DNA from: Macrostomum hystrix
Taxonomy: Eukaryota; Animalia; Platyhelminthes
Direction of reading: 5' to 3'
Length of the DNA stretch: 64,000 nt
Assembly (NCBI GenBank): GCA_950097015.1
Contig: CATNEN010000001.1
Location: forward strand, 26,474,001 to 26,538,000
Shown: piece by piece, positions 19,501 to 43,075 of the stretch
Layout: the number at the start of each line of letters is the position of its first letter
Position numbering within the stretch: the stretch's first letter is position 1
Position numbers and translations under genes: made by a program
The notes under the pieces: model-generated
Told to the model about the DNA's origin: nothing
Seen by the model: only the letters and a program-made list of their open reading frames with translations
The model's database searches: none

Positions 19501-20133
19501 GTCCTCCAGTTTCGCGGCGAACACTTGGTACGACTCCTCCGATGCCCTCCGCAAGGATCTGAATCGCTGCCGGTACGTCTCCTCGCCAATGTTATACCGC
19601 GCCAGGATTGCCGCCTTTGCCATCTCATAGTCCGCATTCGCTGCTGTCGTCAAGCTGTGGAATGCACTTTGCGCCTTGCCCGTCAGCAGTGGTCCAAGTC
19701 GAATCGTCCAATCTTGCTTCTGCCATCCGCATGATGTTGCCGATCTCTCGAATGTCGCCAGAAATGACTCTATGTCGTCCGCGTCAGTCAGCTTGAACAG
19801 CTTCGGCTCCACGGTCTGCGGTCTCGGCTTGGACTCGGCCATGAGTCTGGCGAATTCCGCCTGCTGTCGTGCTAGCTGCTCCAGATAGAATGCCGACTGT
19901 CTCTCCTGAGCCTGTGCCATGTCCTGAAGTTGCCGACTCTGGTGCGTCAAGATCAGCTTCATCGTCTCCATGAGGTTGGCACTATCTATTCCGCTCAGTT
20001 CCTCGCTTTCAGTGGCACCAGTCTCCATCTCTGCCGAGCTCGTCCTGTTGGAGGCTGCAGATTCGCCTGTTGTATCTCTGGATCGCAGGTTGTATGGCTT
20101 AGTTGAGCCTGCACCGCTGCCACCATGTGACAT
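16597..20133 (-). CDS. Gag-PR-IN-(truncated RT)-RNase H polyprotein, 1178 aa
   Basis: SCAN-like capsid (ETYRQRFR..LEQF..WMRERKPK..AAQLADDY), knuckle CFNCGGPHKKFQC, protease LDTGA, integrase HHCC plus DDE, then YIDD and RNase H (TDSS, EKECLA, DHKPL, DGLSR). The N-terminal half of RT is absent. Confidence 0.92.
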   Translation of the reverse strand: MSHGGSGAGSTKPYNLRSRDTTGESAASNRTSSAEMETGATESEELSGIDSANLMETMKLILTHQSRQLQDMAQAQERQSAFYLEQLARQQAEFARLMAESKPRPQTVEPKLFKLTDADDIESFLATFERSATSCGWQKQDWTIRLGPLLTGKAQSAFHSLTTAANADYEMAKAAILARYNIGEETYRQRFRSLRRASEESYQVFAAKLEDLFDRWMTAGVDEDEREELRGGDTIIRRKVLLEQFSDSLGRGLQVWMRERKPKNIKEAAQLADDYYMARSNDRNGGTHDQRSQETQDVSHVRASNADRHREIQRTPMLKTKISCFNCGGPHKKFQCPNKPNNSIHLASEDMKVGTSTTGTRMIKGKASGKDLEFLLDTGADRTTIRRNCLPEDINWTGRHGLLRCFGGDLHRLPIAKVDLHLNGFEGIADVCVSDSLPVSALIGLDLIGRLASGVENPTAAAGAAQTAYETQAADPHPPANQEKGVVGAPVCPIPQSEGDRALAYEGIMASGLVQIDPEPPSTQRPRLTRAQARKQRQEYREKLEPNIGQMAWDYEAALQEDGEMLEKLRDNDAILKVNGRLYRTQAAGEDQLVLPKSLRLTALTQAHESAFAGHLGVKKTSQGLLQRFWWPTVAKDVKDFVTTCDKCQKTARIGCTQKVPLVQVPGVEEAFSKVIIDISGPYPKSSSGHKYILSVIDAATRFPEGFPLRNIDAETVAKALIDCFSRTGFPKEIQSDKGTNFSSALLQALYQCTGVEGIQSTPYHPQSQALVERFHGTLKTMLRRLPAREKKKWDLYLPYLLFAIREVPNETTGFSPFELLYGRTVRGPLDLLRQTWDEKLTAEKKDIITFVLAQRDRLQAGLEASRSNEELERKRWKHWYDLNCSSATYQRLMDKVLLGIDSAESYIDDIAVFSETFEQHLQDLRRVFNRLKAAGLTVQPRKCFLGGTSTDYLGFKLGSDEISTSEDRVRAIKAREQPRTKTQLRSVLGVLNHYRRFIPNYADQVAALTELTRRTTPEDLTAAWGEKHTRAFEVAKALMTSEPVLRAPDYGRPFILETDSSETGLGAVLTQEFEDGIHPVLFVSRRLTAAEQGYATIEKECLAVRWAVEKLRHYLLGRHFIIRSDHKPLQYLQLDHANPRLQRWAHYLSGFDYAIQYQPGESNGATDGLSRLWSPTK
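20112..20125 (-). promoter_or_regulatory. Primer-binding site for tRNA-Leu
   Basis: TGGTGGCAGCGGTG directly follows the 5' LTR and is complementary to the 3' end of metazoan tRNA-Leu (..CACCGCTGCCA-CCA). Confidence 0.85.
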
Positions 20134-20699: not shown

Positions 20700-21154
20700 T
20701 ATTTACAATGCAATAAATAGCAACTGAACCGCAGTTCGCTTCGCTAAAATGTTTTTCTTTTCACTGAGAGAAATGCTTTACTTTAACATCGCCTTTCGGT
20801 TCGTTCGTCGCTTCTTTCACTGCGAATTGCCACACTGGCGCATGATAAACTGCTGGAATTTAAGATCCACAACCACAACAGCCAAATGCGTTTTGTCAAG
20901 TGATTATTGATTGATTTTTATACCTCGTTTTTGAAAAGCAAACGACAGAAAAATGTTTTGAGTAAGTTTTTCTGTAGAGTCAGAGAAACTGGCAAAATGT
21001 GGCAAGTGGTGTTCTTTTTTGTTGAAAAACTTGCCTGCGAAAGAATTTTATTTTCGACGAGTCGCATTTAATGCAATTGGTACTTAAAGAAGTGAAAAAC
21101 TTCAGAGCTGGGAATCAAAATAGAAAGAAAGCACTGCAGAGGTGATTTAAGAAA

Positions 21155-22915
21155 ATGAATTTCCTGCAGCTTGTTTTTCGGTTGCTTCTTTTGCTTCCGT
21201 TGTTACACGACAATGTTGCTTCTGGCATCCGGATCTGCAAATCCTTACATATAACCAGCTACGGCTATGAGACCCACAGAAATGTTAGTCGCTTGCAGGC
21301 GGACTTAACGGCTTTAGTAGCTGGCTGCCAGTATGTTTTCGGCAACGTGAAATTGAGCAATATAGGTATTGACGAATTAACATACGAACCGCTGGACGAT
21401 GAAATTCGAGACATGCAAACTGACTTTCTTGACTCCATTGTGGAGATTAGAGGAAAAATTGTGATCCGGTTCGTCAACCTTGAGCGCGTCACCTTCCGCA
21501 ACTTGCGCACCATCCGAGGTTCCGCTATTGAAAAATTTTCTGGCTACACATTTGGAATATTCAATTCGCCGAACTTGAGCAAGCTGGAATTGCCCAAGTT
21601 GACAGCTATCACAAAGCGAAATGTTTATACGATTGGGCTAGAAATTAAGTCTAGCTTGTACTGCTACCTGTCCTACAGTATCAACTGGAGAAGCCTGTTT
21701 CATGAACCACACCAGCGCTATTTTGATAAAGTGTTATCTGTTACTACTGGAGATGGCCAAAATGTTATGAAAAGCTCGAACTCGAGTGTGATTGATAGGC
21801 ATACCTGCAGTCGTCAGATTTCCTGTCACGCTAATTGTACTCGTAATCCAATTTATAACCAAACTTGCTGGTCCGACGGTGTTGATGGCTGCCAAAGTAA
21901 TCATCTGTGTCGTAAGCGCAAGTGTAAATTTACGAACCTATGCTTCCATAACCCGAGCACTGGCCAAGAAGACTGCTGCCACGACGACTGCCTTGGCGGA
22001 TGCTCAAACCGGCCCAACGAGTGCTTCGCCTGTCGGAGAGGAGTATTGTTCAATGGTGTCTGTAGAGAATCCTGTCCGTCGAATACTAGTACCGCTAGTG
22101 GTAATGGCACTGGCGTGACTGTTTGGCGACAGATCGGCAACATCTGCGTAGAGAAGTGCTCACTGCCCTTTGTTGTTAGCTCTGACGGCAGGCGCTGTTT
22201 AATCGAGTGTCCATCAGCAGAAGTCCCTATCAAAGGAGTTTGCACAAAGTGTATTGACAAAATTAGCTCTAAGCCCTGCAAATCGTGCAATGTCTTCTTT
22301 AGAATATCTAAAAAATTAGCATACTCATTGAGGACTGAGCAGTGTTCGATTTGGAGGGCCGATTCTTCTCTATACGTGTATGCTAGTGATCTAAGTAGCT
22401 TAGAATACCTTAGAGCATTCGAGAATTTAGAGTACTTTTACGGAAGTCTAATAATTGAGACATCTGCATACTTACCAGACAATCTCCGATTCCTACGTAA
22501 TATCAAATACGTCACTGATTCATTTGAGATTTTCTCGCTCAATACGAGATACCTCGGACTAGCTAGCTAACGGTCAATAGCTAGCTTGGAATATACTCGT
22601 GACCTTCAGCTTAGGAATATTAGTGATCTTTGCAGAGCCTGGTATCCAAGCAATCGAATCCGAGAAATCCAGGAAGTCACTAAAGAATTTCAAATTACAA
22701 TAGAAAACCTGAGCTTTGATGACAGCAGCGAGATTTGCCGGAACGCTACCTGCGATGCTCAGTGCCAGGACGAATGCTGGGGACCCGGTCCAGACATGTG
22801 CGTGGCGTGTCGGAACTTCAAAGTGAACGGCCGCTGCTATGCCACCTGTGCGGAGTCGGGCAGGATTGAAGTAAATGGGAATTGTGAACTGCCTGTGCCA
22901 CAGCTAATCGGCTAA
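21155..22915 (+). pseudogene. Secreted EGFR-ectodomain-like gene, copy 1 (premature stop at 22568-22570)
   Basis: Same architecture as copies 2 and 3. An 18-bp in-frame insertion introduces TAA in L2, giving a 471-aa product; the frame resumes at 22586. Confidence 0.88.
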
Positions 22916-25900
22916 TGCGATGAAGGCTGCAACGGTCCAGGGCGTGATCAGTGTGTGAACTGAGAAGTTTCGTTACGAACAAATCAGTGCTTCATTGTAA
23001 TGAGACTAAATTTGAGCTACTAATAGTAAACCAATATCCCTATGAAAATTCTAAGATGAAATTTGGAACAATTTGTTTGTCTTCAATTAGTCGATTAGCA
23101 CATGCAGTGGCACACCATCAAGGCAAGCCGTTGTGGCCATATTTGGTCACCTGAGTTTGACGTCGCCATTTGTTGAAGCCAGTCAGGAAAAGACCTTCAG
23201 CACTTGAGTGTTTTTAGTTTTCGATACCTAAATAAAAATAGACTCGTACTTCAAAATCAAATACTACTACTCACAGTAGTATTTGTCGTGCATGCACGAC
23301 ATGCACGCATGCACGTCCTTCATAAGCTTGTGCATTGCTGTAGCTGAGTAAATCATTTGCCTATCAAGTATTTAATCAACAAGGTGCTTTGTGGCTCGCA
23401 CTTTTACTCAGCAGCAGAGCTGCACAATGTCTACTCGATGTACTCGAATTAGGCGTTGAGTTGAAAAGTCAGGGTTTTGTGAAGAGTCTTACACGGGTAT
23501 AACTCCCTTGCTGCTTTTATTATATCCAGTTTAGTGTTGCTATCGGCATGCGTTTACTGGTGTTATTTTACGGAGCGTCACTTCTAGGCACTACAGACTC
23601 AAGGATGCTACTTTCTTTAGATTGTTCGCTCAAGCTAGTTTACAATATTAGATCTCGCTTCTCTGCGACTACTGGTCTGAGTACAGAGACAATTCAACTC
23701 AGGAACGAAATCTCAACTCGCGATAGCTCGAGCAAAGCTGTGAGCCATTTCTCTCGACTTAACTAAGGTATTTAACGGTTGAAAGGAGAGAAATGTGTCA
23801 AGCCAAACACGCGCGCACACACAATAGCTAAGGGCTACTGCGTGCATCCAATGATTGGATAGAGGTGCTGCACATATAAAATCCGATTTCGTCGTTAATG
23901 GACGTTTAATGGGCGCATTCTGAGCCACGAATCTATCGTCTATGGTTGGAAAATGCGAAGTCTTGAACCAGTGTGCCATATTATGGTCCCGAAAACGGGG
24001 CCCATTAAACCGTATAATGGGCGCCAAATAATGGGCCGCAAATCATTTATTGACGCGAAACGTTTCAAACATGTTTAAACAAGTAGAATAAGCGACAACT
24101 AAGTAGTTAATAGTCAGTGGCAGTAACGGTCAATACCCAGCGTGAGGTAAACATCGTTAGTCGAATTTGATCACGATCCTGCCACCCTCGATGACAAGAG
24201 ACTTGACCCCGTGGCCAGCAGTGGACTTACCGGAGTCCGCTTGATGGACCACTGACGTTCGTCAGACGACTGGAGTCCTGCAAAGCGTCAGAGGCAATCC
24301 TCGTAACCTTGGCCGATGGGCCTATTCTCATTCGAAATATTATGATCTCAAAATAAAAATTAATAATAATGATTGCTTCTCGATATTCGAGACACTTTTC
24401 TTAAGCTCTGAAAATAAAACAACGCTAGCAGCTACGCCTGCTCAATCAGTCCTCTTTTAGAATTTAATCGTAGATCGTATAACGCTTGAAGAAATGCTCG
24501 AAAAGAAGTTAAAAATTAAAACAAATGACGCATTTAGCTCGTAGCTATGCTCAACATTTTTTTTCTAGTTCTGATTCGGATAACGCTTGCAGTTATGTTG
24601 GATAATTTTTGTTAGCTTGGAATACAAAAAAATGCTAACAGCAACGTAAGCTCAGTCTTCACTTCTTTTTTAATCCTATTGAATATTGCTTGCATGAATG
24701 CTTAAAAACGCTGAAAGTTAAAAGGAACAATCGCATTGCTCAAAGTATTTTCTAATATTTCTGAATCAATAAACCATGGCAGATATGCTCGAAAATTCTT
24801 TCCTCAGTTTTGTAGCGAATAAAACTTGCTGCACTCAAATTTTTTGGGGGGGCGCCCACCCCCAGCCCGCTCCTTATCTGCCTGTCTGGCTTGGAGATCG
24901 GGCCACCTTCCGCCACTCCCCCTCTCCGCCGCTACCCACCTTCCCTCGCTCTCACCACTTCCGCCGCTCCACTCCTTAGCGTAGGGATTTTGCCTACGCT
25001 AGTTTGCCGGCATTTCTTTGTGTCCTGAACCCATTGTGCCACACCACCTAGCCTTCTAGTCTCAGTAGTGCACCGCCATACGATGACGCCACGCCCTAGC
25101 CACCGGCAACTCAGTCTCTATCATACTTACTTCATAATTGTTGCCCGCCGCGGTGCAAGAAGGGATTCAACCCTACGTGAAGACCCTGTTTTATTGTTAC
25201 TATTGTTGCTATATGTCGCTAATACCGAGCGAGTCTGTATGTACACCTATATCCTCTACGTCGCCAATAATAATACTCGTCATCATCTACTACAACCGTC
25301 ATTGCCCGAGTGCTACTGCTAGACAAATATTCGCCGTGTTTGTCGTTATTTATTCCACCTGGGTCCTCACCGAGAGCGTCACATTATTTCTTCGATAATT
25401 CGCTTTTACCATTTCGATAAATAATGTTACCCCCTCCATTATTTTTGCCAGCCACTTGATAAATTATTCTACCCCATTGATTATTTATACTCCACCTTGA
25501 TAATTTATGCTTTCCTCATGATAAATTTTGTTTACCTCTCGATAATTCATTCTCTCCCTCGATAATTCATGCTTCCCTGTTAATCTATCTACTGATTAGC
25601 TACTATCATATCTTTTCTATGGATAATTATGCTTTCTTCTTGATAGTAAATGTTTCCTCTTGGATAAATTATGCTTCCACATCGATTATTAATGCTATCT
25701 TTTGGAAATCTCATGCTTTCCCCCAGAAATATCATGCTTATCTTGCTAAACAACTCGTAAAAACGATACAATTGAAAAAGCTAAACGCTAATATTGCTGT
25801 GGTTTAAATGTTGCCTTATATTTCTAAATCTAATTACGCTTGCAGCAACGTGCGAAAAATCTGTCCTTAGTTTTATACTGAATAACGCCTTTTTACCGAA

Positions 25901-27379
25901 AGACTATATTTTTTCACTATATTATTACTCGTACCCAAAAGAGCTGAATAAAAATGTAAATAGAAAACAGTTACTGATAATTATGCATAACAATAATTAG
26001 CTACCCCTTGATAGATCATACTACCCCTCAATAATTCCTGCTAGTGTTGTAGTGCTGCTTTTTAATAGCACTTCCCTAGTAATTTAACTTCCTCTATTAG
26101 TAATGCATAATGCAAGTGGTTGGCTTAACCTCCTTATTTATTGTTTTCAGTCACTTAAAGTGACCTGTACAATCATTATACCGCACCCCTGTTGGGTGGA
26201 TTGATTCAAACTACTGAGATTTTGGGTAGCGTGGCTTTCAACACGATAGATCTGGCCTTCTGCCAGTAATGTTCTAGATACTAAATCTAGGTAATTCTGG
26301 AGACACTGCGGCTCTCAGGTGTTTCAGACAATTTAGTCAGATATTTCGGGCTCTCTGGCCAGTCTGTACTCGGGCTTCTCCCGGATCGGTTTTTAACGGT
26401 TTCCACTCACTTAGAAATAAGTAAGGCTTTTGAGTATGCTCACAAAGAGACAGAACTGTTTAAGCTCCAATTTAATGGCAGACCAAACGGTTAGCTTCCT
26501 GTATGAAAACCCCTCTGTATTTATACCAAAAATCCTATCGAATATTCCCAGTATATTTCAGTGGAGTAAAACAAAGTTTATGTATAGATATTTGTAGCAT
26601 ATAAAAAATATGCTACATATTTAGATGTTTTAACATGTTTTAACATGTTCTAACATGTTAAATGTTTAACATTTAACATGTTAGATGTTAAATTTATTTC
26701 GCGCGCTAGTTTAATTTGGCCAATGAGAGCCCTTTACACTATCCCTAAATAAATTATTCTATCCTTTTGAAAAAAGTGCTATACCCTGAAAGTATTATGT
26801 TATCCTAGAAATCTCATGCAATGTACATTAAGTTAGCACATTAAGTTAGCCATATATTAACGCACGTAGGGTGCTACAAGTAGTGACGCAATCCTATTCA
26901 ATTGAGAGCATCCGCCCTGTTCTGTGCTACTAACGCACGCACGGGCGAGAAAAAGCACAGATGCAATCTAATAAAGCTGACAGTGTCCGGCCCTATTCTA
27001 TACAGAAAAAACTGGGTCTATTGTATTCTGGATCTATTCTAACAGAAAATGACTGCTTTTTCGAATATTAAATGCCTTTAAAATTAGCAAATAATTCGAA
27101 AAACGTGTACCATCTCGTTAAGAAGGCAAATATTTTAGAGAAAGAATCGCGAAAATCGGACAACGTTTTTGCTAGAACAACGACAAGACCACATTTTACA
27201 TTGAGTGAATGGACACACACACTTTTAGCATAATAGAAGATAGAGAGTACAACATCCCTCCCAATAGCTCGTATTGGTTAACGACTGAGGAATAGAGAAT
27301 GATTAAAATAAGCATTTTGTTTCCACGCATGCGAAGCTCACAAAAGGTAACGTAGTTTGGCACGGGACACAAACTTAAA

Positions 27380-27912
27380 TGCAGTAGGTAAGTCAGATTG
27401 TCACAGTCAAGTCCTTGTTAGCGGTTCGCTTTACTTTGACACCGGATGCTGCCATCGACTGGCGTTCCGAACATCAGATCGGCGGCGGAGATTCCCGTGA
27501 CGGTGTGTGGCGTGTTGCTGTACACGGCGAGCCACTCTCGCAGCGCAGCTCGCCAATCAGTTTCTTGGGCTTCAGAAATGCAGAGCAGCTTGCTGAGGGA
27601 CCGATTTAGTTGCTCTGTAATGCCATTTAATTTGCAGTGGTATCGTCTGATGCGTAGATGGCTAATCCTGAGACTTTTGACAAAGCTGTTCAACACCTTT
27701 GATGCAAACAGTGGGCTGTTGTCGGATACAACCTGTCCTGCGGTTCCGAACGTTCCGAAGATCTGCTGCAGTTTTTTGATAGTGGCTTCTGCTGTCAGCG
27801 ATTTCCTGGCACAACGAATGGGTAGCGTTAGAAATGTTCGACAACTACCATGAAGTGCCGGCCGTTAATTGGCACGAGGAAGTCAAACCCGACGGTCTCT
27901 GGCGCTGAGTCT
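27380..27912 (-). pseudogene. LTR-retrotransposon integrase remnant
   Basis: TAEATIKKLQQIFGTFG...VVSDNSPLFAS...YHCKLNGITEQLNRSL is a degenerate rve core with frameshifts. Confidence 0.75.
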
Positions 27913-28255
27913 CTGGCCTTGACAGAAAAGCATGAGAAATGATACGCGGGAAAGGATGGAAGGAGAGCGTCGCGATGTTACAGATTTCGCGACACTCAGG
28001 AAATCCTACTCAGAAGTGCGGATATCCCTTTCGAATTTCCTTGTTCTCCATTGCCTACCCTAATAAGTCGTTGCGTTGCTTTAAGGCGAGGGACTCAGCC
28101 TTTTCACAATATTCAGCATCAGACCTTTGGTGCAGTGCTAGGGCTACCGCTGCATGGTCTCTATTAAAACTACTTAGTGGCTTTTAAAGGCCGATTGTAG
28201 GCACAATCGCGCTGCTATGCCGAGTGTTTTGAATGTCGTCCGTACTGCATTTCAG

Positions 28256-28528
28256 ACAACAAGACCTTCACAAAGACTGACAGGCCAACCAAGACAGTCA
28301 CCGCCACTGTTGCAACTAACTGGACTGTGTCCATTAGGAACGACCTCTTCTGTCTGGAGAAGTGCGCCAGCAGCCCCAGCTGCCAGGCTGTGATTTTCAA
28401 CGAACGGCAGCTGCTGTGCCACCTGCTCAGGTTTTTTTGAGTGCCACTCAAGCTCAAGAATTCTCCGAACAACTTACAACGCGGATCACAAAAATATCTG
28501 GAGAACTAAGGCAGGGACCACTGAGTAA
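28256..28528 (+). pseudogene. Orphan PAN/apple-domain exon
   Basis: Acceptor CTGCATTTCAG, phase 1; translates ..FCLEKCASSPSCQAVIFNERQLLCHLLRF, paralogous to 60354-60592. No upstream exon is visible. Confidence 0.7.
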
Positions 28529-29239
28529 ATCGCCAGGGGAAAAAGCATCCGAAATCTCACATTTTCTCGCAACCATTGCCGATCCAAACATTTCCTTCAC
28601 CTGCTACATATAGGTTAATATAAACGAAATGTCAAGATACGAGCGTAGGCCAAAGTTGAGTTACGAGTTACATAATTGACTGCTCATATATAGAAGTTAG
28701 CACATTAAAACGTATTTAAAACTAGTCTATTTAACTGCATATTATTTATACGCGGTTTTGAGGTCCTTAATGAAACAAAAAACTATTCTGTTATACTGCC
28801 AAACATGGAAAAACGAAGGTTAAGGGTCTCAAAATGTCCTGTTTGTTTCTAGATCAGAAATACTTGGCAGAATGTGATTTGTACAAAGTTAAAATCTGTT
28901 TCTTTACACGAAAACGTTACAAAACCAGAGTGATGCAGAACCGAGATTGAAACGCGAAATATTTCATATTTCCGTTTAACAATTCTTCTAGCTTGCTTAT
29001 ATGGTTTTTCGATTTCAATTTTTTCAGTTTTACTTCACTAGCTTCTGCGCCATAAAATTTATTATTCTACCAATATGACTCATGTAAACGAAAAAGTACT
29101 GTTGGGAACTGAACTGAATATTGCTTGTACTCTCTTGCTAGCAATTAGACTTTTCTTTTCTGCGTGGCCTTTAAGTGACAACCAGGCATCTATTGGATAA
29201 TTATCTGCATTGGATAATATTGGAAAATTACCTATTGCA

Positions 29240-30600
29240 GCTGCCGAAGACCGCGTACAACGTTCCAGCCCCCAGAACCTGCCGTCTATTGCCAGCACGA
29301 TCGCCATAGTCCCGAGGAGAGGTCCCCGCGGCGGGTGCCGATCGCCATTATCCTGAAGAAAGGCAAGAAATCCGATGAGATTGGCTTCTTCTGGTCGATT
29401 GCCCTGAACTCAAGGCTGGCTAAGCTAGCCGAGCGTTTGGTCCAAGCGTGGCTCTACGGGTGGGCCGAGTTCCAGCAACTGCGGCACACCTTTTACTTTT
29501 TACTTAATTGCAGGGGGCCTGGGGCACTTGACGCACAAGCGCAGGAACGACTAGGCGGGAGTCGCCCATCGCGCCATCTGCACCCCTGGACACAGGAACC
29601 TCACACAGCCGCAAGCCAAGTGGGGAAGGGGGCGGCAGCCGGAGTGCCACTATCTCACCACAGGCCCGCACACGCACAGAGCAGACCAAACCAGGGGAGG
29701 ACTTCGATGCCTGAAGGGTAGGGTCGAGAGGACCAAGCCACGCGCGCAGACGGCTGGTGAAACCTCGCCGCTCAGAGCACGCATGGCTGGTGCACACCCG
29801 CCCCACCCCCATACAACGCCTCACACCCGGCCCAACGCACAAACACAAACACAAACAAGCAGGCATGCAGAAGGCAGGGGTTAGGCTATTCTAAATTAGC
29901 TTTGGTTGCACAGAATAAGGTGCATCTCCGCAAGTCACTACTTCGCAAATCTCCAGCTAAGCCCCGAAATAATCGTGACTTGGAGGGAGGAACGAACCAG
30001 CGACCATTGGAAAGTGAGGCAGCGACATTAGCCGCTGACCCACTCACCCCCTCCTGCTGCACCCCACTCAGGCCGGTCGATGCGCAGCAGCAGATTGCCC
30101 GGCTTACTCAGCTCATCAGTGACGGCCACCAGAAGCCAGACGGATGGTTGCCGTCTTGTTTGAGTTCCGTAGACTGTCTAGAATCAGGGTCTGTTGCACA
30201 TGCTGCACGCCGCCTGGATCTGGCCGCGGGCGTTCGCTGGCAAACAAGCCTCTTGGCTGACCGACGAGCTGCTGTCAAGGCGCATGGCGCGCTGAGCAGC
30301 CCGGATCTTTCGCTAGGCCCTGCCGCAGTCGCGTTCTCGCCCCACTCCTCTTAGCGCTGAACATCAACGACCTACCCGGCTGCTGTCAGAGTACGTGTAT
30401 TCTGGATGAACTTTGCTTGACGCAGATGATCTCGCCGTCGCGGTGCAAGGCTTGACTCCGGAGGAGGCCGAGGCGAAAGCGCAGCGGGCAATTGACGCGG
30501 TCACCGCCTGAGAGAAGACTGGTTTATCTTTGGCTAAACGATATAACTTTCGCCTTGGACCGCCAGCAGCGCTTCCTCGGCATCATCCTGGATCACTGAA
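29240..30600 (+). pseudogene. Non-LTR retrotransposon RT remnant interrupted by a SINE
   Basis: ILKKGK..SIALNSRLAKLAERLVQAWL..LHPTQAG..QQIARLTQLISDG..ADDLAVAV, with stops and frameshifts. Confidence 0.75.
29491..30054 (-). mobile_element. tRNA-derived SINE (family 1)
   Basis: Homologous to 12552-13155; head has TGGGTCAGCGG and GGTTCGTTCC boxes; degenerate ~11-bp TSD TGCTGCAC(A/C)CC. Confidence 0.8.
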
Positions 30601-31333
30601 ATCGGGGTTTCCAGGCCTCTATCGGCGTCAATATTGCACCTGCCTGCGTTTTTTATACGAGATTGAGGAGAAGGCCGCTTACCTGTTTATTAACTAGCCT
30701 AGCTTACGAGCCCTGTCTCTTCACCTCCACAAAGAAGTGGGCTAACGTTACAGCCTGAGCAGATCTCGGATATCTCCTGCTGTTTCCTGTTGCGAACAGA
30801 GCGGTTGGGCGCTGGCCAGACATCCGTTCTGAGGAGAGAACGCTTGGGCGAAGCGCTCGCAGGCAGCTCGCTCAGCTGCGCAGCAGGCTGTCTCCCCTCC
30901 TAGCCGCCTGCATGGCCCGCACACACACACATACACACACACACAAACATTTTCAAACTCCTTCAGGAAGCAAAAATGATTCACTTAAATTTAGTCTTTC
31001 ACGCTTCTTTTACTGAGAATTGCCCGAGTTGGAGCACAGTTAACTCCTGGAATTTAAGAGACAAAAATAAAACAGGCCAAAGTCATTTGACTTGTGATTA
31101 TTGATTGATTTTTATACCTCGTTTTGAGAAAAATGTTTTGAGTAAGTTTTTCTGCAGAGTCAGAGAAACGGGCAAAATGTGGCAAGTGGTGTTCTTTTTT
31201 GCTGAATAATTTGCCTGCGAAAGAATTTTGTTTTCGACGAGTCGCATTTAATTCAATTGGTATTTAAAGAAGTGAAACCTTCAGAGCTGGGAATCAAAAT
31301 CGAAAGAAAGCACTACAGAGGTGATTTAAGAAA

Positions 31334-33082
31334 ATGAATTTCCTGCAGCTTGTTTTTCGGTTGCTTCTTTTGCTTCCGTTGTTACACGACAATGTTGCTT
31401 CTGGCATCCGGATCTGCAAATCCTTACATATAACCAGCAAGGGCTATGAGACCCACAGAAATGTTAGTCGCTTGCAGGCGGACTTAACGGCTTTAGTAGC
31501 TGGCTGCCAGTATGTTCACGGCGACGTGACATTGGACAGAATAGGCTTTAGCGAATTCACAAACAAACAGCTTGGCGATGAAATTCGAGGCATGCAAACT
31601 GACTTTCTTGACTCCATTGTGGAGATCAGAGGAAAACTAGTGATCGAGCAAGTCAACCTTAAGCGCGTCACCTTCCGTAACTTGCGCACCATCCGAGGTT
31701 ATGCTTTTAATGAATCTACTGACTTCCCATTATATTCATTTGTATTATTCTTTTCGCGGTACATGAGGAAGCTGGAATTGCCCAAGCTGACTGCAATCAC
31801 AAAGAAAAATGTATATCTATTGGGGCCAATGCAGTCTAGCTTGTACTGCTACCTGTCCTACAGCATCAACTGGAGAAGCCTGTTTCAAGAACCAGGCCAG
31901 CGTTATTTTGATAACATATTTTCTGTTATTACAGAAGAAGGCCCAGATCTTTTGAGACGCTGGAGCTCACATGTGATAAGGCATACCTGCAATCGTCTGC
32001 TTTCCTGTCACGCCAATTGTACTCAAACTCCAATTTATAACCAAACTTGCTGGTCCGACGGTGTCGATGGCTGCCAAAGTAATCATCTGTGTCGTAAGCG
32101 CAAGTGTAAATTTACGAACCTATGCTTCCATAACCCGAACACTGGCCAAGAAGACTGCTGCCACGACGACTGCCTTGGCGGTTGCTCAAACCGGCCCAAC
32201 GAGTGCTTCGCCTGTCGGAGAGGAGTATTGTTCAATGGTGTCTGTAGAGAATCCTGTCCGTCGAATACTAGTACCGCTAGTGGCAATGGCACTGGCGTGA
32301 CTGTTTGGCGACAGATCGGCAACATCTGCGTAGAGGAGTGCTCACTGCCCTTTGTTGTTAGCTCTGACGGCAGGCGCTGTTTAATCGAGTGTCCGTCAGC
32401 AGAAGTCCCTATCAAAGGAGTTTGCACAAAGTGTATTGACAAAATTAGCTCTAAGCCCTGCAAATCGTGCAATGTCTTGTCTAGAATGACTGACGATTTA
32501 GTATACTCCTTGAGGACTGAGCAGTGTTCGATTTGGAGGGCCGATTTTTCTGTTCTAGTCGTGTATGCTGATTGGTTGAGTAGCTTAGAAAACCTGAAAG
32601 TATTGGAGAATTTAGAGTACTTTTACGGCAATTTAATATTTCAGAAATCTCAACGCTTGACAGATAATCTTCGATTCCTACGTAATATCAAACATGTCAC
32701 TTCTTCCTTTGAGATTACATTTCTCAAGACGAGATACCTCGGACTAGCTAGCTTGGAATATACTCCTAACCTTGAGCTTAAGGATATTAGAGATCTTTGC
32801 AGAGCCTGGTATCCTAGCAATCGAATCCGAGAAATCCAGGAAGTCACTAAAGAATTTCAAATTACAATCGAAAACCTGAGCTTTGATGACAGCAGCGAAA
32901 TTTGCCGGAACGCTACCTGCGATGCTCAGTGCCAGGGCGAATGCTGGGGACCCGGCCCAGACATGTGCGTGGCGTGTCGGAACTTCACAGTGAACGGCCG
33001 CTGCTATGCCACCTGTGCGGAGTCGGGCAGGATTGAAGTAAATGGGAATTGTGAACTGCCTGTGCCACAGCTAATCGGCTAA
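31334..33082 (+). CDS. Secreted EGFR-ectodomain-like protein, copy 2 (582 aa, intronless)
   Basis: Signal peptide; L1 (GCQYVHGDV, FLDSIVEIRG, NLRTIRG, CYLSYSINW); furin-like Cys-rich region (CCHDDCLGGC..CFACR..GVCRESCP); L2; domain IV (CWGPGPDMCVACRN). No TM helix; AATAAA about 315 bp downstream. Confidence 0.92.
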   Translation: MNFLQLVFRLLLLLPLLHDNVASGIRICKSLHITSKGYETHRNVSRLQADLTALVAGCQYVHGDVTLDRIGFSEFTNKQLGDEIRGMQTDFLDSIVEIRGKLVIEQVNLKRVTFRNLRTIRGYAFNESTDFPLYSFVLFFSRYMRKLELPKLTAITKKNVYLLGPMQSSLYCYLSYSINWRSLFQEPGQRYFDNIFSVITEEGPDLLRRWSSHVIRHTCNRLLSCHANCTQTPIYNQTCWSDGVDGCQSNHLCRKRKCKFTNLCFHNPNTGQEDCCHDDCLGGCSNRPNECFACRRGVLFNGVCRESCPSNTSTASGNGTGVTVWRQIGNICVEECSLPFVVSSDGRRCLIECPSAEVPIKGVCTKCIDKISSKPCKSCNVLSRMTDDLVYSLRTEQCSIWRADFSVLVVYADWLSSLENLKVLENLEYFYGNLIFQKSQRLTDNLRFLRNIKHVTSSFEITFLKTRYLGLASLEYTPNLELKDIRDLCRAWYPSNRIREIQEVTKEFQITIENLSFDDSSEICRNATCDAQCQGECWGPGPDMCVACRNFTVNGRCYATCAESGRIEVNGNCELPVPQLIG

Positions 33083-33803
33083 TGCGATGAAGGCTGCAAC
33101 GGTCCAGGGCGTGATCAGTGTGTGAACTGAGAAGTTTCGTTAAGAACAAATCAGTGCTTTATTGTAATGAGACTAAATTTGAGCTACTAAAGTAAACCAA
33201 GATCCCTATGAAAATTCTAAGATGAAATTTTGGAACAAGTTTTTGTCTTCAAATAGTCGATTAGCACATGCAGTGGCACACCATCAAGGCAAGCCGTTGT
33301 GGCCATATTTGGTCCCCTGAGTTTGACGTCGCCATTTGTTGAAGCCAGTCAGGAAAATTACTTCAGCACTTAAGTGCTTTTAGTTTTTGTATACCTAAAT
33401 AAAAATAGAAAATTGACTCAAACTCTAAAATCAAATACTACTACTCACAGTAGTATTTGTCGTGCATGCACAACATGCACGCATGCATGTCTTTCATAGG
33501 CTTGTTCAGTGCTCTAGCTGAGTAAATCATTTGCCTATTAAGCATTTAATCAACAAGGTGCTTTGTGACTCGCACTTGTACACAGCAGCAGAGCTGTACG
33601 ATGTCTACTCGATGTACTCAAAATAGGCGTTGAGTTGAAAAGTCAACGTTTTGTGAAGAGCCTACACAAGTACCCTTGCTGCTCTTATTATATCCGGTTT
33701 AGTATATATCGGCATGCGTTACTGGGGTTATTTTACGGAGCGTCACTTCTTGGCACTACAGACTCAAGGATGCTACTTTCTATAGATTGTTCGCTCAAGC
33801 TAG

Positions 33804-37600: not shown

Positions 37601-38179
37601 TAGAAATCTCATGCAATGTACATTAAGTTAGCACATTAAGTTAGCCATATATTAACGCACGTAGGGTGCTACAAGTAGTGACGCAATCCTATTCAATTGA
37701 GAGCATCCGCCCTGTTCTGTGCTACTAACGCACGCACGGGCGAGAAAAAGCACAGATGCAATCTAATAAAGCTGACAGTGTCCGGCCCTATTCTACAGAA
37801 AAAACAGGGTCTATTGTATTCTGGATCTATTCTAACAGAAAATGACTGCTTTTTCGAACATTAAATGCCTTTAAAATTAGCAAATAATTCGAAAAACGTG
37901 TACCATCTCGTTAAGAAGGCAAATATTTTAGAGAAAGAATCGCGAAAATCGGACAACGCTTTTGCTAGAACAACGACAAGACCACATTTTACATTGAGTG
38001 AATGGACACACACACTTTTAGCATAATAGAAGATAGAGAGTACAACATCCCTCCCAATAGCTCGTATTGGTTAACGACTGAGGAATAGAGAATGATTAAA
38101 ATAAGCATTTTGTTTCCATGCATGCGAAGCTCACAAAAGGTAACGTAGTTTGGCACGGGACACAAACTTAAATGCAGTA

Positions 38180-38900
38180 GGTAAGTCAGATTGTCACAGT
38201 CAAGTCCTTGTTAGCGGTTCGCTTTACTTTGACACCGCGGATGCTGCCATCGACTGGCGTTCCGAACATCAGATCGGCGGCGGAGGTTCCAGTGACGGTG
38301 TGTGGCGTGTTGCTGTACACGGCGAGTCACTCTCGCAGCGCAGCTCGCCAATCAGTTTCTTGGGCTTCAGAAATGCAGAGCAGCTTGCTGAGGGGCCGAT
38401 TTAGTTGCTCTGTAATGCCATTTAATTTGCCGTGGTATCGTCTGATGCGTAGATGGCTAATCCTGAGACTTTTGACAAAGCTGTTCAACACCTTTGATGC
38501 AAACAGTGGGCTGTTGTCGGATACAACCTGTCTAGCGGTTCCGAACGTTCCGAAGATCTGCTGCAGTTTTTTGATAGTGGCTTCTGCTGTCATTGATTTC
38601 CTGGCACAAAGAATGGGTAGCGTTAGAAATGTTCGACAACTACCATGAAGTGCCGGCTGTTAGTTGGCGCGAGGAAGTCAAACCCGACGGTCTCTGGCGC
38701 TGAGTCTGGCGCAGGAGCTTTTTCATGACTTGCAGACTTTGCCTTCAGCCGCATCGAAGTTTCTGTGCCCAATTCACCGCATCGATAGCATGGCATCGGT
38801 CTGTCATGCTGCTCGCTCCCTGCTCGAAGCAGATGATTGATGAAATCCTTGCGGCTTGTTCCGCATGGCTGTTGACTGATAGCTGGCAGCTTCAAAGGCT
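38180..38900 (-). pseudogene. LTR-retrotransposon integrase remnant (duplicate of 27380-27912, longer)
   Basis: Same degenerate rve core, plus upstream sequence containing CYRC. Confidence 0.72.
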
Positions 38901-39704
38901 CGGGTCAGCTGAAGGGCTTGCTGGAGGCCGATGCAATTTTCTTTAGTGCTATTGTTTTATGCAACGTAAGGCAGGGACCACTGAGGAAATCGCCAGGGGA
39001 AAAAGCGTCCGAAATCTCACATTTTCTCGCACCCATTGCCGATCAAAATATTTCCTTCACCTGCTACAGATAGGTTAATATCAACGAAATGTCAAGATAC
39101 GAGCGAAGGACAAAGTTGAGTTACGAGTTACATAATTGACTGCTCATATATAGAAGTTAGCACATTAAAACGTATTTAGAACTAATCTACAAGTATTTAA
39201 CTGCATATTATTTATACACGGTTTTGAGGTCCTTAATAAAACAAAAAACTATTCTGTTATACTGCCAAACATGGAAAAACGAAGGTTAAGCGTCTAAAAA
39301 TGTCCTGTTTGTTTCTAGATCAGAGATACTTGGCAGAATGTGATTTGTACAAAGTTAAAATCTGTTTCTTTACACGAAAACGTTACAAAACCAGAGTGAT
39401 GCAGAACCGAGATTGAAACGCGAAATATTTCATATTTCCGTTTAACAATTCTTCTAGCTTGCTTATATGGTTTTTCGATTTCAATTTTTTCAGTTTTACT
39501 TCACTAGCTTCTGCGCCATAAAATTTATTATTCTACCAGTATGACTCATGTAAACGAAAAAGTATTGTTAAGAACTGAACTGAATATTGCTTGTACTCTC
39601 TTGCTAGCAATTAGACTTTTCTTTTCTGCGTGGCCACTAAGTGACAACCAGGCATCTATTGGATAATTATCTGCATTGGATAATATTGGAAAATTACCTA
39701 TTGC

Positions 39705-41314: not shown

Positions 41315-43075
41315 ATGAATTTCCTGCAGCTTGTTTTTCGGTTGCTTCTTTTGCTTCCGTTGTTACACGACAATGTTGCTTCTGGCATCCGGATCTGCAA
41401 ATCCTTACATATAACCAGCAAGGGCTATGAGACCCACAGAAATGTTAGTCGCTTGCAGGCGGACTTAACGGCTTTAGTAGCTGGCTGCCAGTATGTTCAC
41501 GGCGACGTGACATTGGACAGAATAGGCTTTAGCGAATTCACAAACAAACAGCTTGGCGATGAAATTCGAGGCATGCAAACTGACTTTCTTGACTCCATTG
41601 TGGAGATCAGAGGAAAACTAGTGATCGAGCAAGTCAACCTTAAGCGCGTCACCTTCCGTAACTTGCGCACCATCCGAGGTTATGCTTTTAATGAATCTAC
41701 TGACTTCCCATTATATTCATTTGTATTATTCTTTTCGCGGTACATGAGGAAGCTGGAATTGCCCAAGCTGACTGCAATCACAAAGAAAAATGTATATCTA
41801 TTGGGGCCAATGCAGTCTAGCTTGTACTGCTACCTGTCCTACAGCATCAACTGGAGAAGCCTGTTTCAAGAACCAGGCCAGCGTTATTTTGATAACATAT
41901 TTTCTGTTATTACAGAAGAAGGCCCAGATCTTTTGAGACGCTGGAGCTCACATGTGATAAGGCATACCTGCAATCGTCTGCTTTCCTGTCACGCCAATTG
42001 TACTCAAACTCCAATTTATAACCAAACTTGCTGGTCCGACGGTGTCGATGGCTGCCAAAGTAATCATCTGTGTCGTAAGCGCAAGTGTAAATTTACGAAC
42101 CTATGCTTCCATAACCCGAACACTGGCCAAGAAGACTGCTGCCACGACGACTGCCTTGGCGGTTGCTCAAACCGGCCCAACGAGTGCTTCGCCTGTCGGA
42201 GAGGAGTATTGTTCAATGGTGTCTGTAGAGAATCCTGTCCGTCGAATACTAGTACCGCTAGTGGCAATGGCACTGGCGTGACTGTTTGGCGACAGATCGG
42301 CAACATCTGCGTAGAGGAGTGCTCACTGCCCTTTGTTGTTAGCTCTGACGGCAGGCGCTGTTTAATCGAGTGTCCATCAGCAGAAGTCCCTATCAAAGGA
42401 GTTTGCACAAAGTGTATTGACAAAATTAGCTCTAAGCCCTGCAAATCGTGCAATGTCTTCTTTAGAATAACAAAAAAATTAGCATACTCATTGAGGACTG
42501 AGCAGTGTTCGATTTGGAGGGCCGATTCTTCTGATCTAGTCGTGTATGTTGATTGGTTAAGTAGCTTAGATAACCTGAAAGTATTGGAGAATTTAGAGTA
42601 CTTTTACGGCAATTTAATAATTCGGACATATGATATATACGAGCCGTACTTACTAGACAATCTCCGATTCCTACGTAATATCAAACTCGTCACGGACTCC
42701 TTTAAGATTTTCTCGCTCAAGACGAGATACCTCGGACTAGCTAGCTTGGAATATACTGCTGACCTTCTGCTTAGGAATATTAGTGATCTTTGCAGAGCCT
42801 GGTATCCTAGCAATCGAATCCGAGAAATCCAGGAAGTCACTAAAGAATTTCAAATTACAGTAGAAAACCTGAGCTTTGATGACAGCAGCGAGATTTGCCG
42901 GAACGCTACCTGCGATGCTCAGTGCCAGGACGAATGCTGGGGACCCGGCCCAGACATGTGCGTGGCGTGTCGGAACTTCAAAGTGAACGACCGCTGCTAT
43001 GCCACCTGTGCGGAGTCGGGCAGGATTGAAGTAAATGGGAATTGTGAACTGCCTGTGCCACAGCTAATCGGCTAA
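41315..43075 (+). CDS. Secreted EGFR-ectodomain-like protein, copy 3 (586 aa, intronless)
   Basis: Same architecture as copy 2. The first ~380 aa are identical to copy 2 and L2 is a patchwork of copy 1-like and copy 2-like segments. Confidence 0.92.
   Translation: MNFLQLVFRLLLLLPLLHDNVASGIRICKSLHITSKGYETHRNVSRLQADLTALVAGCQYVHGDVTLDRIGFSEFTNKQLGDEIRGMQTDFLDSIVEIRGKLVIEQVNLKRVTFRNLRTIRGYAFNESTDFPLYSFVLFFSRYMRKLELPKLTAITKKNVYLLGPMQSSLYCYLSYSINWRSLFQEPGQRYFDNIFSVITEEGPDLLRRWSSHVIRHTCNRLLSCHANCTQTPIYNQTCWSDGVDGCQSNHLCRKRKCKFTNLCFHNPNTGQEDCCHDDCLGGCSNRPNECFACRRGVLFNGVCRESCPSNTSTASGNGTGVTVWRQIGNICVEECSLPFVVSSDGRRCLIECPSAEVPIKGVCTKCIDKISSKPCKSCNVFFRITKKLAYSLRTEQCSIWRADSSDLVVYVDWLSSLDNLKVLENLEYFYGNLIIRTYDIYEPYLLDNLRFLRNIKLVTDSFKIFSLKTRYLGLASLEYTADLLLRNISDLCRAWYPSNRIREIQEVTKEFQITVENLSFDDSSEICRNATCDAQCQDECWGPGPDMCVACRNFKVNDRCYATCAESGRIEVNGNCELPVPQLIG

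What the first reader, a model, noticed from the sequence alone, without database searches (positions are those of the whole stretch)
21255..32010. Hypervariability confined to the predicted ligand-binding faces of L1 and L2
Seen: the signal peptide and both Cys-rich regions are nearly identical between copies, while L-domain strands differ radically. Examples in L1 (copy 1 vs 2): FGNVKLSNI / HGDVTLDRI, GKIVIRFV / GKLVIEQV, SAIEKFSGYTFGIFNSPN / YAFNESTDFPLYSFVLFFSRY, NVYTIGLEIK / NVYLLGPMQ. In L2: GSLIIETSAY / GNLIFQKSQR / GNLIIRTYDIYEPY, and DSFEIFSLN / SSFEITFLK / DSFKIFSLK. Alternating buried hydrophobics are largely retained while neighbours change, and loop indels keep the frame. Known: the equivalent EGFR strands (GNLEITY, GYVLIALN, YALAVLSN) form the flat beta-helix face that binds ligand. 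Inference: diversifying selection on a binding surface, reminiscent of LRR immune receptors.
Basis: partly seen in the sequence, partly recalled or inferred. Interest (0 to 1): 0.82.

Follow-up and report, generated by a model that had tools for sequence, protein, structure and literature searches.

The report
Diversifying secreted EGF-receptor ectodomain genes
A flatworm (Macrostomum hystrix) carries about twenty compact genes that encode only the secreted, ligand-binding outer part of an EGF receptor. Selection has repeatedly changed the outward-facing residues of the two binding domains while the scaffold is kept constant, so the genes look like a repertoire of soluble binders whose targets are unknown.

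Summary
The window holds three tandem, intronless genes about 10 kb apart: copy 1 at 21155-22915 (broken by an in-frame TAA), copy 2 at 31334-33082 and copy 3 at 41315-43075. Each encodes signal peptide, L1, Cys-rich CR1, L2 and a stub of CR2, with no membrane span or kinase. The genome holds at least 17 intact paralogs that share the same stop codon.

In an 18-gene codon alignment the Cys-rich parts are under purifying selection (dN/dS 0.35-0.44). Site models find 17% of L1 codons at omega about 4 and 11% of L2 codons at omega about 6. The likelihood-ratio statistics (128 and 167) are five to ten times larger than any value from neutral simulations with heavy recombination.

Selected sites recur at the same outward positions (+3, +5, +6) on six successive strands in each L domain. 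These strands align with the EGF-contact strands of EGFR.

Two caveats apply. Synonymous divergence is also 2-4 times higher in the L domains, because gene conversion homogenises the framework and shuffles L1 and L2 modules; copies 2 and 3 have identical L1. "Confined" is also too strong, since about a quarter of the selected sites lie elsewhere.

Targets and expression are untested. The scan had already noted this family on other DNA of this genome (s1-849774, s1-262284).

The parts
21155..22915 (+). Copy 1 of the secreted EGFR-ectodomain gene. It is broken by an 18-bp in-frame insertion (22568-22585) that starts with TAA at 22568-22570. The upstream ORF is 471 aa, and the rest (22586-22915) continues in frame.
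   Evidence: Pfam Recep_L_domain, Furin-like and GF_recep_IV
31334..33082 (+). Copy 2, an intact 582-aa ORF. Signal peptide is aa 1-24 (31334-31405), L1 aa 25-225 (31406-32008), CR1 aa 226-379 (32009-32470), L2 aa 380-523 (32471-32902) and the CR2 stub aa 524-582 (32903-33079). The stop TAA is at 33080-33082.
41315..43075 (+). Copy 3, an intact 586-aa ORF. Its first 1140 nt differ from copy 2 at 1 position, whereas L2 differs at 51 of 423 nt and carries a 4-codon insertion. It is a recombination mosaic.
31418..31927 (+). Six L1 strand 'rungs' of copy 2: aa 29-36, 63-70, 100-107, 134-141, 158-165 and 191-198. Their outward positions (+3, +5, +6) are hypervariable and positively selected, while +2 and +4 are conserved hydrophobics.
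   Evidence: alignment to EGFR
32471..32878 (+). Six L2 strand rungs of copy 2: aa 380-387, 403-410, 432-439, 457-464, 478-485 and 508-515. They show the same +3/+5/+6 pattern.
32255..32329 (+). Loop of CR1 (aa 308-332, CPSNTSTASGNGTGVTVWRQIGNIC) that aligns with the ErbB dimerisation arm. It is the most conserved part of the family (dN/dS 0.03-0.09; one substitution, T319A in L011, among the 18 genes).
33083..33130 (+). Fifteen in-frame 'fossil' CR2 codons (CDEGCNGPGRDQCVN) after the TAA, then TGA. The same sequence follows copy 1 (22916-22963) and copy 3. It matches the continuation of full-length paralogs, and no membrane span or kinase remnant lies further downstream.
31261..31268 (+). Conserved TATA-like TATTTAAA at -73 from the ATG. 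The same element lies at 21081-21088 and 41242-41249.
33398..33403 (+). Conserved AATAAA 316 nt after the stop. The same element lies at 23231-23236 and 43391-43396.

Best explanation
The three genes belong to a multigene family found so far only in Macrostomum hystrix. The family has at least 17 intact genes and about 5 broken ones, in tandem arrays on contigs C1, C15 and C39. Each gene encodes a secreted, kinase-less EGF-receptor ectodomain: signal peptide, L1, CR1, L2 and the first part of CR2.

The family began when a stop codon arose inside CR2 of an EGFR paralog. Every member shares that TAA and the in-frame fossil codons behind it. The truncated gene then amplified.

Each protein most likely clamps a partner between the flat sheets of L1 and L2, as EGFR clamps EGF. 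Because the tether region of domain IV is missing, the protein should be permanently open. The outward residues of six stacked strands in each L domain are under strong diversifying selection, which gives each paralog a different binding surface.

The scaffold, meaning the signal peptide, CR1 with its dimerisation-arm loop, and the CR2 stub, is kept by purifying selection and homogenised by gene conversion. Recombination also swaps whole L1 and L2 modules between paralogs.

Shown here: the domain architecture, the family size, omega > 1 at periodic outward strand positions, the conversion mosaic, and the homology of those strands to EGFR contact strands. Inferred: secretion, binding, and the nature of the targets (endogenous EGF-like ligands, partner-derived molecules or foreign molecules).
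For: Architecture:
- Pfam finds Recep_L_domain, Furin-like and GF_recep_IV.
- A family profile matches ErbB3, ErbB4 and EGFR ectodomains with E down to 1e-102.
- The AF2 model (pLDDT 67) has as its top Foldseek matches the Drosophila EGFR ectodomains 3I2T and 3LTF and extended HER2.
- The only hydrophobic segment is N-terminal, and no membrane span or kinase lies downstream.

Family:
- There are 48 genomic matches, 17 of them intact ORFs of 575-586 aa that end at the same TAA.
- A TATA-like element and an AATAAA are conserved.

Selection:
- M2a over M1a gives 2dlnL = 128 for L1 and 167 for L2. M8 over M7 gives 134 and 161. The selected class has omega 4.0-6.3.
- Seven separately treed blocks are all significant.
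- Sixteen neutral simulations with recombination gave at most 27, with omega2 at most 2.4.
- CR1 and CR2 have omega 0.35-0.44.

Geometry:
- Selected sites sit at phase +3 in 9 of 12 rungs, +5 in 8 of 12 and +6 in 4 of 12, and at +1 or +2 in none.
- Outward codons have omega 2.6 (p = 1.6e-5) and inward codons 0.77, at equal dS.
- 13 of 23 L1 selected sites fall in the 39 codons aligned to EGFR site-1 strands (odds ratio 7.7, p = 2e-5).
- The alignment to 1MOX puts Q106 on EGFR L69. As paralogous-domain positions, V103, E105, F131 and Y161 fall on L382, Q384, F412 and I438. These are EGF contact residues according to PMC8838133.

Conversion and shuffling:
- Divergence at 4-fold sites of invariant residues is 0.18 in L1, 0.13 in L2, 0.08 in CR1, 0.06 in CR2 and 0.01 in the signal peptide, against 0.4-0.5 in the outer flanks.
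- The L1 and L2 trees disagree.
- Copies 2 and 3 differ at 1 of 1140 nt and then at 51 of 423 nt.
Against: - There is no expression, secretion or binding evidence.
- Averaged over a whole L domain, dN/dS is only about 1, and dS is itself elevated.
- My site models used fixed iqtree branch lengths with one scale factor, not full PAML or HyPhy optimisation. Recombination inflates such tests, as my own nulls reaching 27 show.
- The strand anchors for the phase analysis were placed after I had seen the alignment.
- The AF2 model is of moderate quality and I had no coordinates, so 'same face' rests on sequence alignment and periodicity.
- The rung-by-rung alignment of the family's L2 to EGFR domain III is ambiguous. 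Pfam does not detect L2, and the profile alignment has a gap of about 30 residues.
- Ten L-domain selected sites lie off the strands.
- Copy 1 and several other members are broken, so some turnover or decay is going on.
Confidence: 0.75

Rival explanations
1. Conversion mosaic only. The variable L-domain tracts are old, neutrally diverged segments that escaped the gene conversion homogenising the rest of the gene, and there is no positive selection.
For: - dS is 0.21 in L1 and 0.15 in L2, against 0.09 in CR1 and 0.045 in CR2. The same gradient holds at 4-fold sites of invariant residues.
- Domain-wide dN/dS is about 1.
- Copies 2 and 3 are an obvious recombination mosaic.
- The full-length EGFR paralogs on C9 show exactly this pattern with omega 0.3-0.4.
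Against: - Within the same strands, outward codons have dN 0.45 against dS 0.17, while inward codons have dN 0.11 against dS 0.14.
- M2a and M8 find a class with omega 4-6, and the statistics are 5-10 times above those of neutral recombinant simulations.
- The signal persists in 50-codon blocks that each have their own tree.
Confidence: 0.1
2. Decaying pseudogene family. A receptor gene killed by a nonsense mutation was copied around, perhaps with neighbouring repeats, and is drifting; the apparent hypervariability is relaxed constraint.
For: - The family originates from a premature stop with fossil codons behind it.
- Copy 1 and about 5 other loci are broken.
- No expression data are available.
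Against: - 17 of 18 full-length copies keep an ORF of about 580 codons at up to 22% protein divergence.
- CR1 and CR2 have omega 0.35-0.44, and the arm loop 0.03.
- Buried strand positions and the cysteines are conserved.
- M2a beats the nearly neutral M1a by a wide margin.
- The TATA-like element and the poly(A) signal are conserved.
Confidence: 0.05
3. Alignment artefact. The indel-rich loops are misaligned, which creates false non-synonymous differences.
For: Some selected sites adjoin gaps: P132, L133, the column-172 insertion, V409 and Y411.
Against: Most selected sites lie in ungapped strands flanked by invariant residues: T66, D68, R69, V103, E105, Y161-L163, Q437, E460-F463, E481, D484 and E513.
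Confidence: 0.03

Closest known systems
EGFR/ErbB receptor ectodomains (human EGFR 1IVO and 1MOX, ErbB3 7MN5, Drosophila EGFR 3I2T and 3LTF)
   Same: The domain order is the same: L1, furin-like CR1, L2, then the start of domain IV. The profile E-value is 1e-102 to ErbB3 and 1e-76 to EGFR, and these are the best fold matches. The variable strands align with the EGF-contact strands.
   Different: There is no membrane span or kinase, and domain IV is cut before the tether region. L2 is about 15 residues shorter and Pfam does not recognise it. The protein is encoded by about 20 diversifying paralogs rather than one to a few conserved genes.
Macrostomum lignano receptor tyrosine kinase PAA79361 (BOX15_Mlig012838), and the full-length M. 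hystrix paralogs on C9 (loci L021-L024)
   Same: These are the closest sequences, at 47-49% identity over the ectodomain. They are likewise intronless, and the framework is likewise homogenised by conversion.
   Different: They are 1090-1104 aa with a membrane span and a kinase. Their L domains are under purifying selection (omega 0.3-0.4). The soluble family forms a separate clade on a long stem.
Soluble ErbB ectodomain isoforms and the engineered sEGFR501 (1MOX). The natural isoforms (sEGFR, p85-sErbB3, herstatin) are cited from general knowledge.
   Same: Both are secreted ligand-binding ectodomains that lack the kinase. Truncation within domain IV leaves an untethered L1-CR1-L2 clamp, and 1MOX is exactly such a construct bound to TGF-alpha.
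   Different: The natural isoforms are splice or proteolytic products of the receptor gene and are conserved. Here the proteins come from dedicated genes, amplified and diversifying.
Drosophila 'secreted decoy of InR' (SDR), named in PMC5985746
   Same: It is a stand-alone gene for a secreted homologue of a receptor ectodomain, from an L-domain receptor tyrosine kinase family, that acts as a ligand trap.
   Different: SDR is a single conserved gene from the insulin-receptor branch. No hypervariable binding face has been reported for it.
Solenoid recognition families under diversifying selection (plant LRR resistance proteins, lamprey VLRs), cited from general knowledge
   Same: Hypervariable outward residues sit on stacked parallel strands with conserved buried hydrophobics. 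The genes lie in tandem arrays, and gene conversion or module exchange occurs.
   Different: The scaffold here is the receptor L domain, not a canonical LRR. There is no somatic assembly and no evidence of an immune role.

Membership tests
EGFR/ErbB-type ectodomain | N-terminal receptor L domain (L1) | tested here: met
   Pfam PF01030, E 2e-14 to 2e-17, scores 54-64 against a cut-off of 21.8
EGFR/ErbB-type ectodomain | Furin-like Cys-rich domain (CR1) with a dimerisation-arm loop | tested here: met
   Pfam PF00757, scores 39-54 against a cut-off of 26.8. The arm-equivalent loop aligns to the ErbB3 arm. Whether it mediates dimerisation is untested.
EGFR/ErbB-type ectodomain | Second L domain (L2, domain III) | tested here: inconclusive
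   Pfam does not call it. The profile alignment to ErbB3 and EGFR runs through domain III with a gap of about 30 residues. The Foldseek alignment covers about 600 columns of whole ectodomains. The rung pattern is the same as in L1.
EGFR/ErbB-type ectodomain | Domain IV (GF_recep_IV) | tested here: inconclusive
   Only profile positions 1-38 of 132 are present. Scores are 27.7 and 28.4 (below the 29.5 cut-off) for copies 2 and 3, and 34.2 for the copy-1 piece. The domain is truncated by the shared TAA.
Receptor tyrosine kinase (EGFR family proper) | Transmembrane helix and cytoplasmic tyrosine kinase | tested here: not met
   The ORF ends at aa 582. tblastn with the full-length paralog finds nothing in the window beyond residue 590. 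There is no hydrophobic segment apart from the N-terminus.
Secreted decoy or soluble receptor | Signal peptide, no membrane anchor | tested here: met
   The N-terminus MNFLQLVFRLLLLLPLLHDNVASG is hydrophobic (Kyte-Doolittle 19-residue mean 1.49 at residues 3-21). There is no other hydrophobic window and the C-terminus is hydrophilic. No dedicated signal-peptide predictor was available.
Secreted decoy or soluble receptor | Binds the ligand of the parent receptor | not testable with these tools
   This needs binding assays. The contact positions are exactly the ones that vary, so a common EGF-like ligand is not implied.
Diversifying solenoid recognition family (LRR-like logic) | omega > 1 concentrated on solvent-exposed strand positions, with buried positions conserved | tested here: met
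Diversifying solenoid recognition family (LRR-like logic) | Multigene tandem arrays with sequence exchange | tested here: met
Diversifying solenoid recognition family (LRR-like logic) | Role in recognising non-self or a partner | not testable with these tools

The most novel reading that the evidence does not exclude
Macrostomum hystrix uses the receptor L-domain clamp of EGFR as the scaffold of a germline-encoded repertoire of soluble recognition proteins. The repertoire is diversified by point selection on two binding faces and by combinatorial exchange of L1 and L2 modules. It would serve either defence against microbes or parasites, or conflict between mating partners in this hypodermically inseminating hermaphrodite. 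This would be a recognition system built on a fold not previously known to play that role.
Probability: 0.35. Interest if true: 0.88.

Novelty: new variant of a known kind. Interest (0 to 1): 0.72.

Why it matters
EGF receptors are among the most conserved signalling receptors in animals, and their ligand-binding faces are normally under purifying selection. Here a truncated copy has become a stand-alone secreted gene, multiplied to about twenty members, and has both binding faces under some of the strongest diversifying selection one sees (omega 4-6).

I found no description of such a family. The closest protein among 1.84 billion cluster representatives is a 48%-identical full-length kinase, and the EGFR survey of flatworms does not mention it.

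If the proteins are binders, they are a natural experiment in re-targeting the EGFR clamp. They would also be a candidate recognition repertoire in a phylum whose immune and sexual-conflict molecules are poorly known. M. hystrix has an inbred line, a genome, positional RNA-seq and RNAi, so the question is directly testable.

Tried and rejected
- Word-indexed protein search with copy 2. It returned only three carp ErbB proteins at 24-28% identity, which is uninformative because full-length relatives exceed the length window.
- The look-up of encoding contigs for transcript or contig evidence.
- My first site-model run timed out. I re-ran it region by region.
- CR1 also gave M2a > M1a (2dlnL = 21), but this lies inside the range of my neutral recombinant simulations (up to 27). 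I do not claim selection there.
- I considered that the paralogs on other contigs might be haplotigs, that is alleles. I rejected this as the main explanation because the assembly comes from line SR1 with F about 0.998 and low BUSCO duplication. The C39 locus is nevertheless collinear at 95% with the window's intergenic DNA, so it is a recent segmental duplicate.
- I considered readthrough or an alternative genetic code at the TAA. I rejected it because a TGA follows after 15 codons and no homology continues beyond that.
- A residue-level structural superposition on the EGFR-EGF complex was not possible, because the tools return no model coordinates. I used sequence alignment and strand periodicity instead.
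- In my scripts copy 1 was read through with NNN (X) at its internal stop. It is not a toxin or effector gene.
- The contig is not human. The genes are intronless, so no spliced model was needed.
Full report
**What is in the window.**
ORF listing and repeat finding show three direct repeats about 10 kb apart, each carrying one intronless gene on the + strand. Copy 1 is at 21155-22915, copy 2 at 31334-33082 (582 aa) and copy 3 at 41315-43075 (586 aa). Copy 1 has an 18-bp in-frame insertion beginning with TAA at 22568, so its first ORF stops at 471 aa.

Pfam finds a receptor L domain, a furin-like Cys-rich region and the first 38 positions of growth-factor-receptor domain IV. A profile of the family matches ErbB3, ErbB4 and EGFR ectodomains in the PDB (E 1e-102 to 1e-76). 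An AlphaFold2 model (mean pLDDT 67) has as its best Foldseek matches the Drosophila EGFR ectodomain (3I2T, 3LTF) and extended HER2.

The N-terminus is a hydrophobic signal-like segment, and there is no other hydrophobic stretch. Each ORF ends ...PVPQLIG-TAA. Fifteen further in-frame codons (CDEGCNGPGRDQCVN) continue the CR2 pattern of full-length paralogs and are then closed by TGA. No transmembrane or kinase remnant lies downstream in the window. A TATA-like TATTTAAA at -73 and an AATAAA at +316 are conserved among paralogs.

**The organism and the family.**
The window is G000:C1:26474001-26538000 of a 220,453,370-bp assembly in 42 contigs. This matches the Macrostomum hystrix assembly of Wiberg et al. 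2023, made from the inbred line SR1 (PMC10468722). The nearest public protein is a Macrostomum lignano receptor tyrosine kinase (PAA79361, 1090 aa, 48% identity).

A six-frame search of the genome finds 48 matches. Seventeen are intact ORFs of 575-586 aa at 78-95% identity to copy 2, and sixteen of them end at the same TAA; L017 has a 4-nt deletion near the end and stops five codons earlier. They lie on C1 (five clusters between 24.5 and 27.4 Mb), C15 and C39. There are about five broken copies as well.

More distant paralogs (47-49% identity) are full receptors with membrane span and kinase in a single 1104-aa ORF (C9), or membrane-anchored forms without a kinase (C3). In a protein tree the soluble family is monophyletic on a long stem. 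It is sister to the clade of M. hystrix full-length genes plus the M. lignano gene.

A full HMMER scan of 1.84 billion cluster representatives found no protein of about 580 aa above 50% identity. The soluble family is therefore absent from public protein sets, including the M. lignano proteome. A survey of flatworm EGFRs (PMC4914847) lists 8 EGFRs in M. lignano and no such secreted family.

**Checking the observation.**
All the quoted strings are present. Between the window copies the nucleotide differences are as follows.

| Region | Differences |
|---|---|
| Signal peptide | 0 of 72 |
| CR1 | 12-13 of 492 |
| CR2 stub | 2-4 of 183 |
| L1, copy 1 vs copy 2 | 93 of 567 |
| L2 | 40-58 of about 420 |

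Copies 2 and 3 differ at 1 of the first 1140 nt and then at 51 of 423 nt in L2. No uniform clock can give this, so it is a recombination or conversion mosaic. In the 18-gene alignment, entropy is near zero in CR1 and CR2 and peaks periodically in L1 and L2.

**Is it selection or only escape from conversion?**
Nei-Gojobori averages over all pairs are shown below.

| Region | dS | dN/dS |
|---|---|---|
| L1 | 0.21 | 0.92 |
| L2 | 0.15 | 1.02 |
| CR1 | 0.09 | 0.44 |
| CR2 | 0.045 | 0.35 |

At 4-fold sites of invariant residues the divergence is 0.18 in L1, 0.13 in L2, 0.083 in CR1, 0.057 in CR2 and 0.014 in the signal peptide. The outer non-coding flanks reach 0.4-0.5. The L1 and L2 trees are discordant.

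I then wrote GY94/F3x4 site models, with iqtree topology and branch lengths and one scale factor.

| Region | M1a vs M2a (2dlnL) | Selected class (M2a) | M7 vs M8 | M8a vs M8 |
|---|---|---|---|---|
| L1 | 128 | 17% of codons, omega 4.1 | 134 | 124 |
| L2 | 167 | 11% of codons, omega 6.1 | 161 | 160 |
| CR1 | 21 | not claimed (see below) | - | - |

Splitting L1 and L2 into seven blocks of about 50 codons, each with its own tree, left all seven significant (2dlnL 22-54, omega2 3.2-6.2).

I also simulated data under the fitted neutral M1a, with each 25-codon block evolved on a tree with 8-12 shuffled tips, which represents heavy recombination. Sixteen replicates gave 2dlnL of 0-27 and omega2 at most 2.4. 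Four replicates without recombination gave 0-3.6. Recombination therefore does inflate the test, and it explains the CR1 value, but not the values for L1 and L2.

**Where the selected sites are.**
Forty-three sites have posterior above 0.95: 23 in the L1 block, 7 in CR1 and 13 in L2.

I anchored each beta-solenoid rung on its conserved Gly/Asn and the two buried hydrophobics. Twelve rungs, six per L domain, then show selected sites at phase +3 in 9 rungs, +5 in 8, +6 in 4, +4 in 2, +7 in 2, 0 in 1, and none at +1 or +2. That accounts for 26 of the 36 L-domain selected sites.

In eight phylogenetically independent pairs, the 36 outward codons have dS 0.17, dN 0.45 and omega 2.6 (binomial p = 1.6e-5). 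The 48 inward or anchor codons of the same strands have dS 0.14, dN 0.11 and omega 0.77. Equal dS with a four-fold difference in dN inside the same tracts is the direct answer to the 'old tracts' objection.

A set defined only by alignment to the EGFR site-1 strands, with buried residues included, holds 13 of 23 L1 selected sites in 39 of 202 codons (odds ratio 7.7, p = 2e-5). Its omega is 1.3, against 0.68 for the rest of L1.

**Homology to the EGF-binding face.**
The phmmer alignment to EGFR 1-501 (1MOX) is ungapped over EGFR 48-92, so copy 2 residue number = EGFR residue number + 37. This puts G100 on G63, V103 on L66, E105 on A68 and Q106 on L69.

The same call aligns the family's L1 to EGFR domain III. 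There V103, E105, F131 and Y161 fall on L382, Q384, F412 and I438, and I70 falls on V350. L69, V350, L382, Q384, F412 and I438 are EGF contact residues (PMC8838133).

The ErbB3 alignment puts G63-I70 on the GNLEI... strand and K29-K36 on the first strand. By motif equivalence, which is my knowledge of the EGFR sequence, these carry Y45 and L14-G18.

The rung-by-rung equivalence of the family's own L2 with EGFR domain III is ambiguous. The family's L2 is about 15 residues shorter, and two alignments are defensible. Only the phase within each rung is secure.

Ten L-domain selected sites lie elsewhere: L54, F72 and F75, a cluster at the L1/CR1 junction (D205, W210, H213), and S383, R384 and W414. 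The model is unreliable at that junction (pLDDT below 50 for residues 224-262). I have no explanation for the junction cluster.

**The conserved parts.**
The loop that aligns with the ErbB dimerisation arm (aa 308-332) has a single substitution among the 18 genes (T319A in L011), with dN/dS 0.03-0.09 and two N-glycosylation sequons. This suggests a conserved interaction, either self-association or a common partner. That is an inference.

The truncation removes the part of domain IV that tethers EGFR shut, which is general knowledge. It is consistent with the model matching extended structures (TM 0.5-0.58) better than tethered ones (TM 0.33-0.38).

**Contrast with the signalling receptors.**
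Between the full-length paralogs L021 and L024, dS is 0.57-0.65 in L1 and L2 but 0.15 in CR1 and 0.00 in CR2, with omega 0.3-0.4. The conversion mosaic is therefore general to this EGFR clade, but positive selection is not. The kinase-less membrane forms (L025-27) have an L2 omega of 1.0-1.7, from only three sequences.

**Conclusion.**
The most likely reading is a family of secreted L1-CR1-L2 clamps whose two binding faces diversify under selection, while conversion keeps the scaffold uniform and shuffles modules. What they bind and where they are expressed is unknown. Immune-type recognition, sexual conflict and trapping of EGF-like ligands all remain open.

Earlier notes of this scan on other members of the family (s1-849774, s1-262284) reached a similar reading. 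I used them only as leads and re-derived everything above. 

Noticed in passing
window 53230-58896 (+): ORFs of a STAND-type NTPase with weak Pfam matches (AAA_22, AAA_16, nSTAND1, NPHP3_N), followed by a 1135-aa ORF with no Pfam match. This NLR-like gene lies about 10 kb from the array.
   Followed up: no
G000 C9:1.03-1.09 Mb (L021-L024) and C3:4.45-4.81 Mb (L025-L027): Tandem full-length intronless EGFR genes show dS 0.57-0.65 in L1 and L2 but 0.15 in CR1 and 0.00 in CR2, with omega 0.3-0.4. This is a conversion mosaic without positive selection. A third class, membrane-anchored but kinase-less (704-784 aa), has an L2 omega of 1.0-1.7.
   Followed up: partly
window 32255-32329 (copy 2 aa 308-332): The loop equivalent to the ErbB dimerisation arm is the most conserved segment of the family (one substitution, T319A in L011, among 18 genes; dN/dS 0.03-0.09) and carries two N-glycosylation sequons. 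It differs from the arm of the full-length paralogs.
   Followed up: partly
window 31946-31999 (copy 2 aa 205-222, L1/CR1 junction): A second hypervariable patch with several selected sites (D205, W210, H213, H217, L222). It lies outside the strand rungs, in a part of the model with low confidence. Its structural position is unexplained.
   Followed up: no
L032 = G000:C39:10517901-10527900: The DNA downstream of paralog L003 on another contig is collinear at 95-96% with the window's intergenic DNA (21833-30949, and parts of 35799-40851). This indicates a recent segmental duplication of an array unit.
   Followed up: partly
window 1-7400: Helitron-type PIF1-helicase ORF fragments lie in perfect inverted repeats (arms 1-1070 and 3645-4714 are 100% complementary), with further copies at 5567-6990.
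   Followed up: no
window 7378-10800: An 18-nt tandem repeat (7378-9306, open in several frames as WGIIVN-type repeats) abuts a 23-nt satellite of at least 66 copies that starts at 9254.
   Followed up: no
window 16597-20133 (-) and 48700-52600: A Ty3/Gypsy-like gag-pol ORF of 1178 aa appears to have integrase placed before a partial RT/RNase H. A DIRS-like element with RT and a tyrosine-recombinase-like ORF lies at 48.7-52.6 kb. The GC content of both is 53-59%, against about 42% for the surrounding DNA.
   Followed up: no
L017 (G000:C15:1668167-1669897): This paralog has a 4-nt deletion near the end. The deletion shifts the frame onto an earlier TAA (protein ends ...CELRHS), so the exact C-terminus is not essential.
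   Followed up: no
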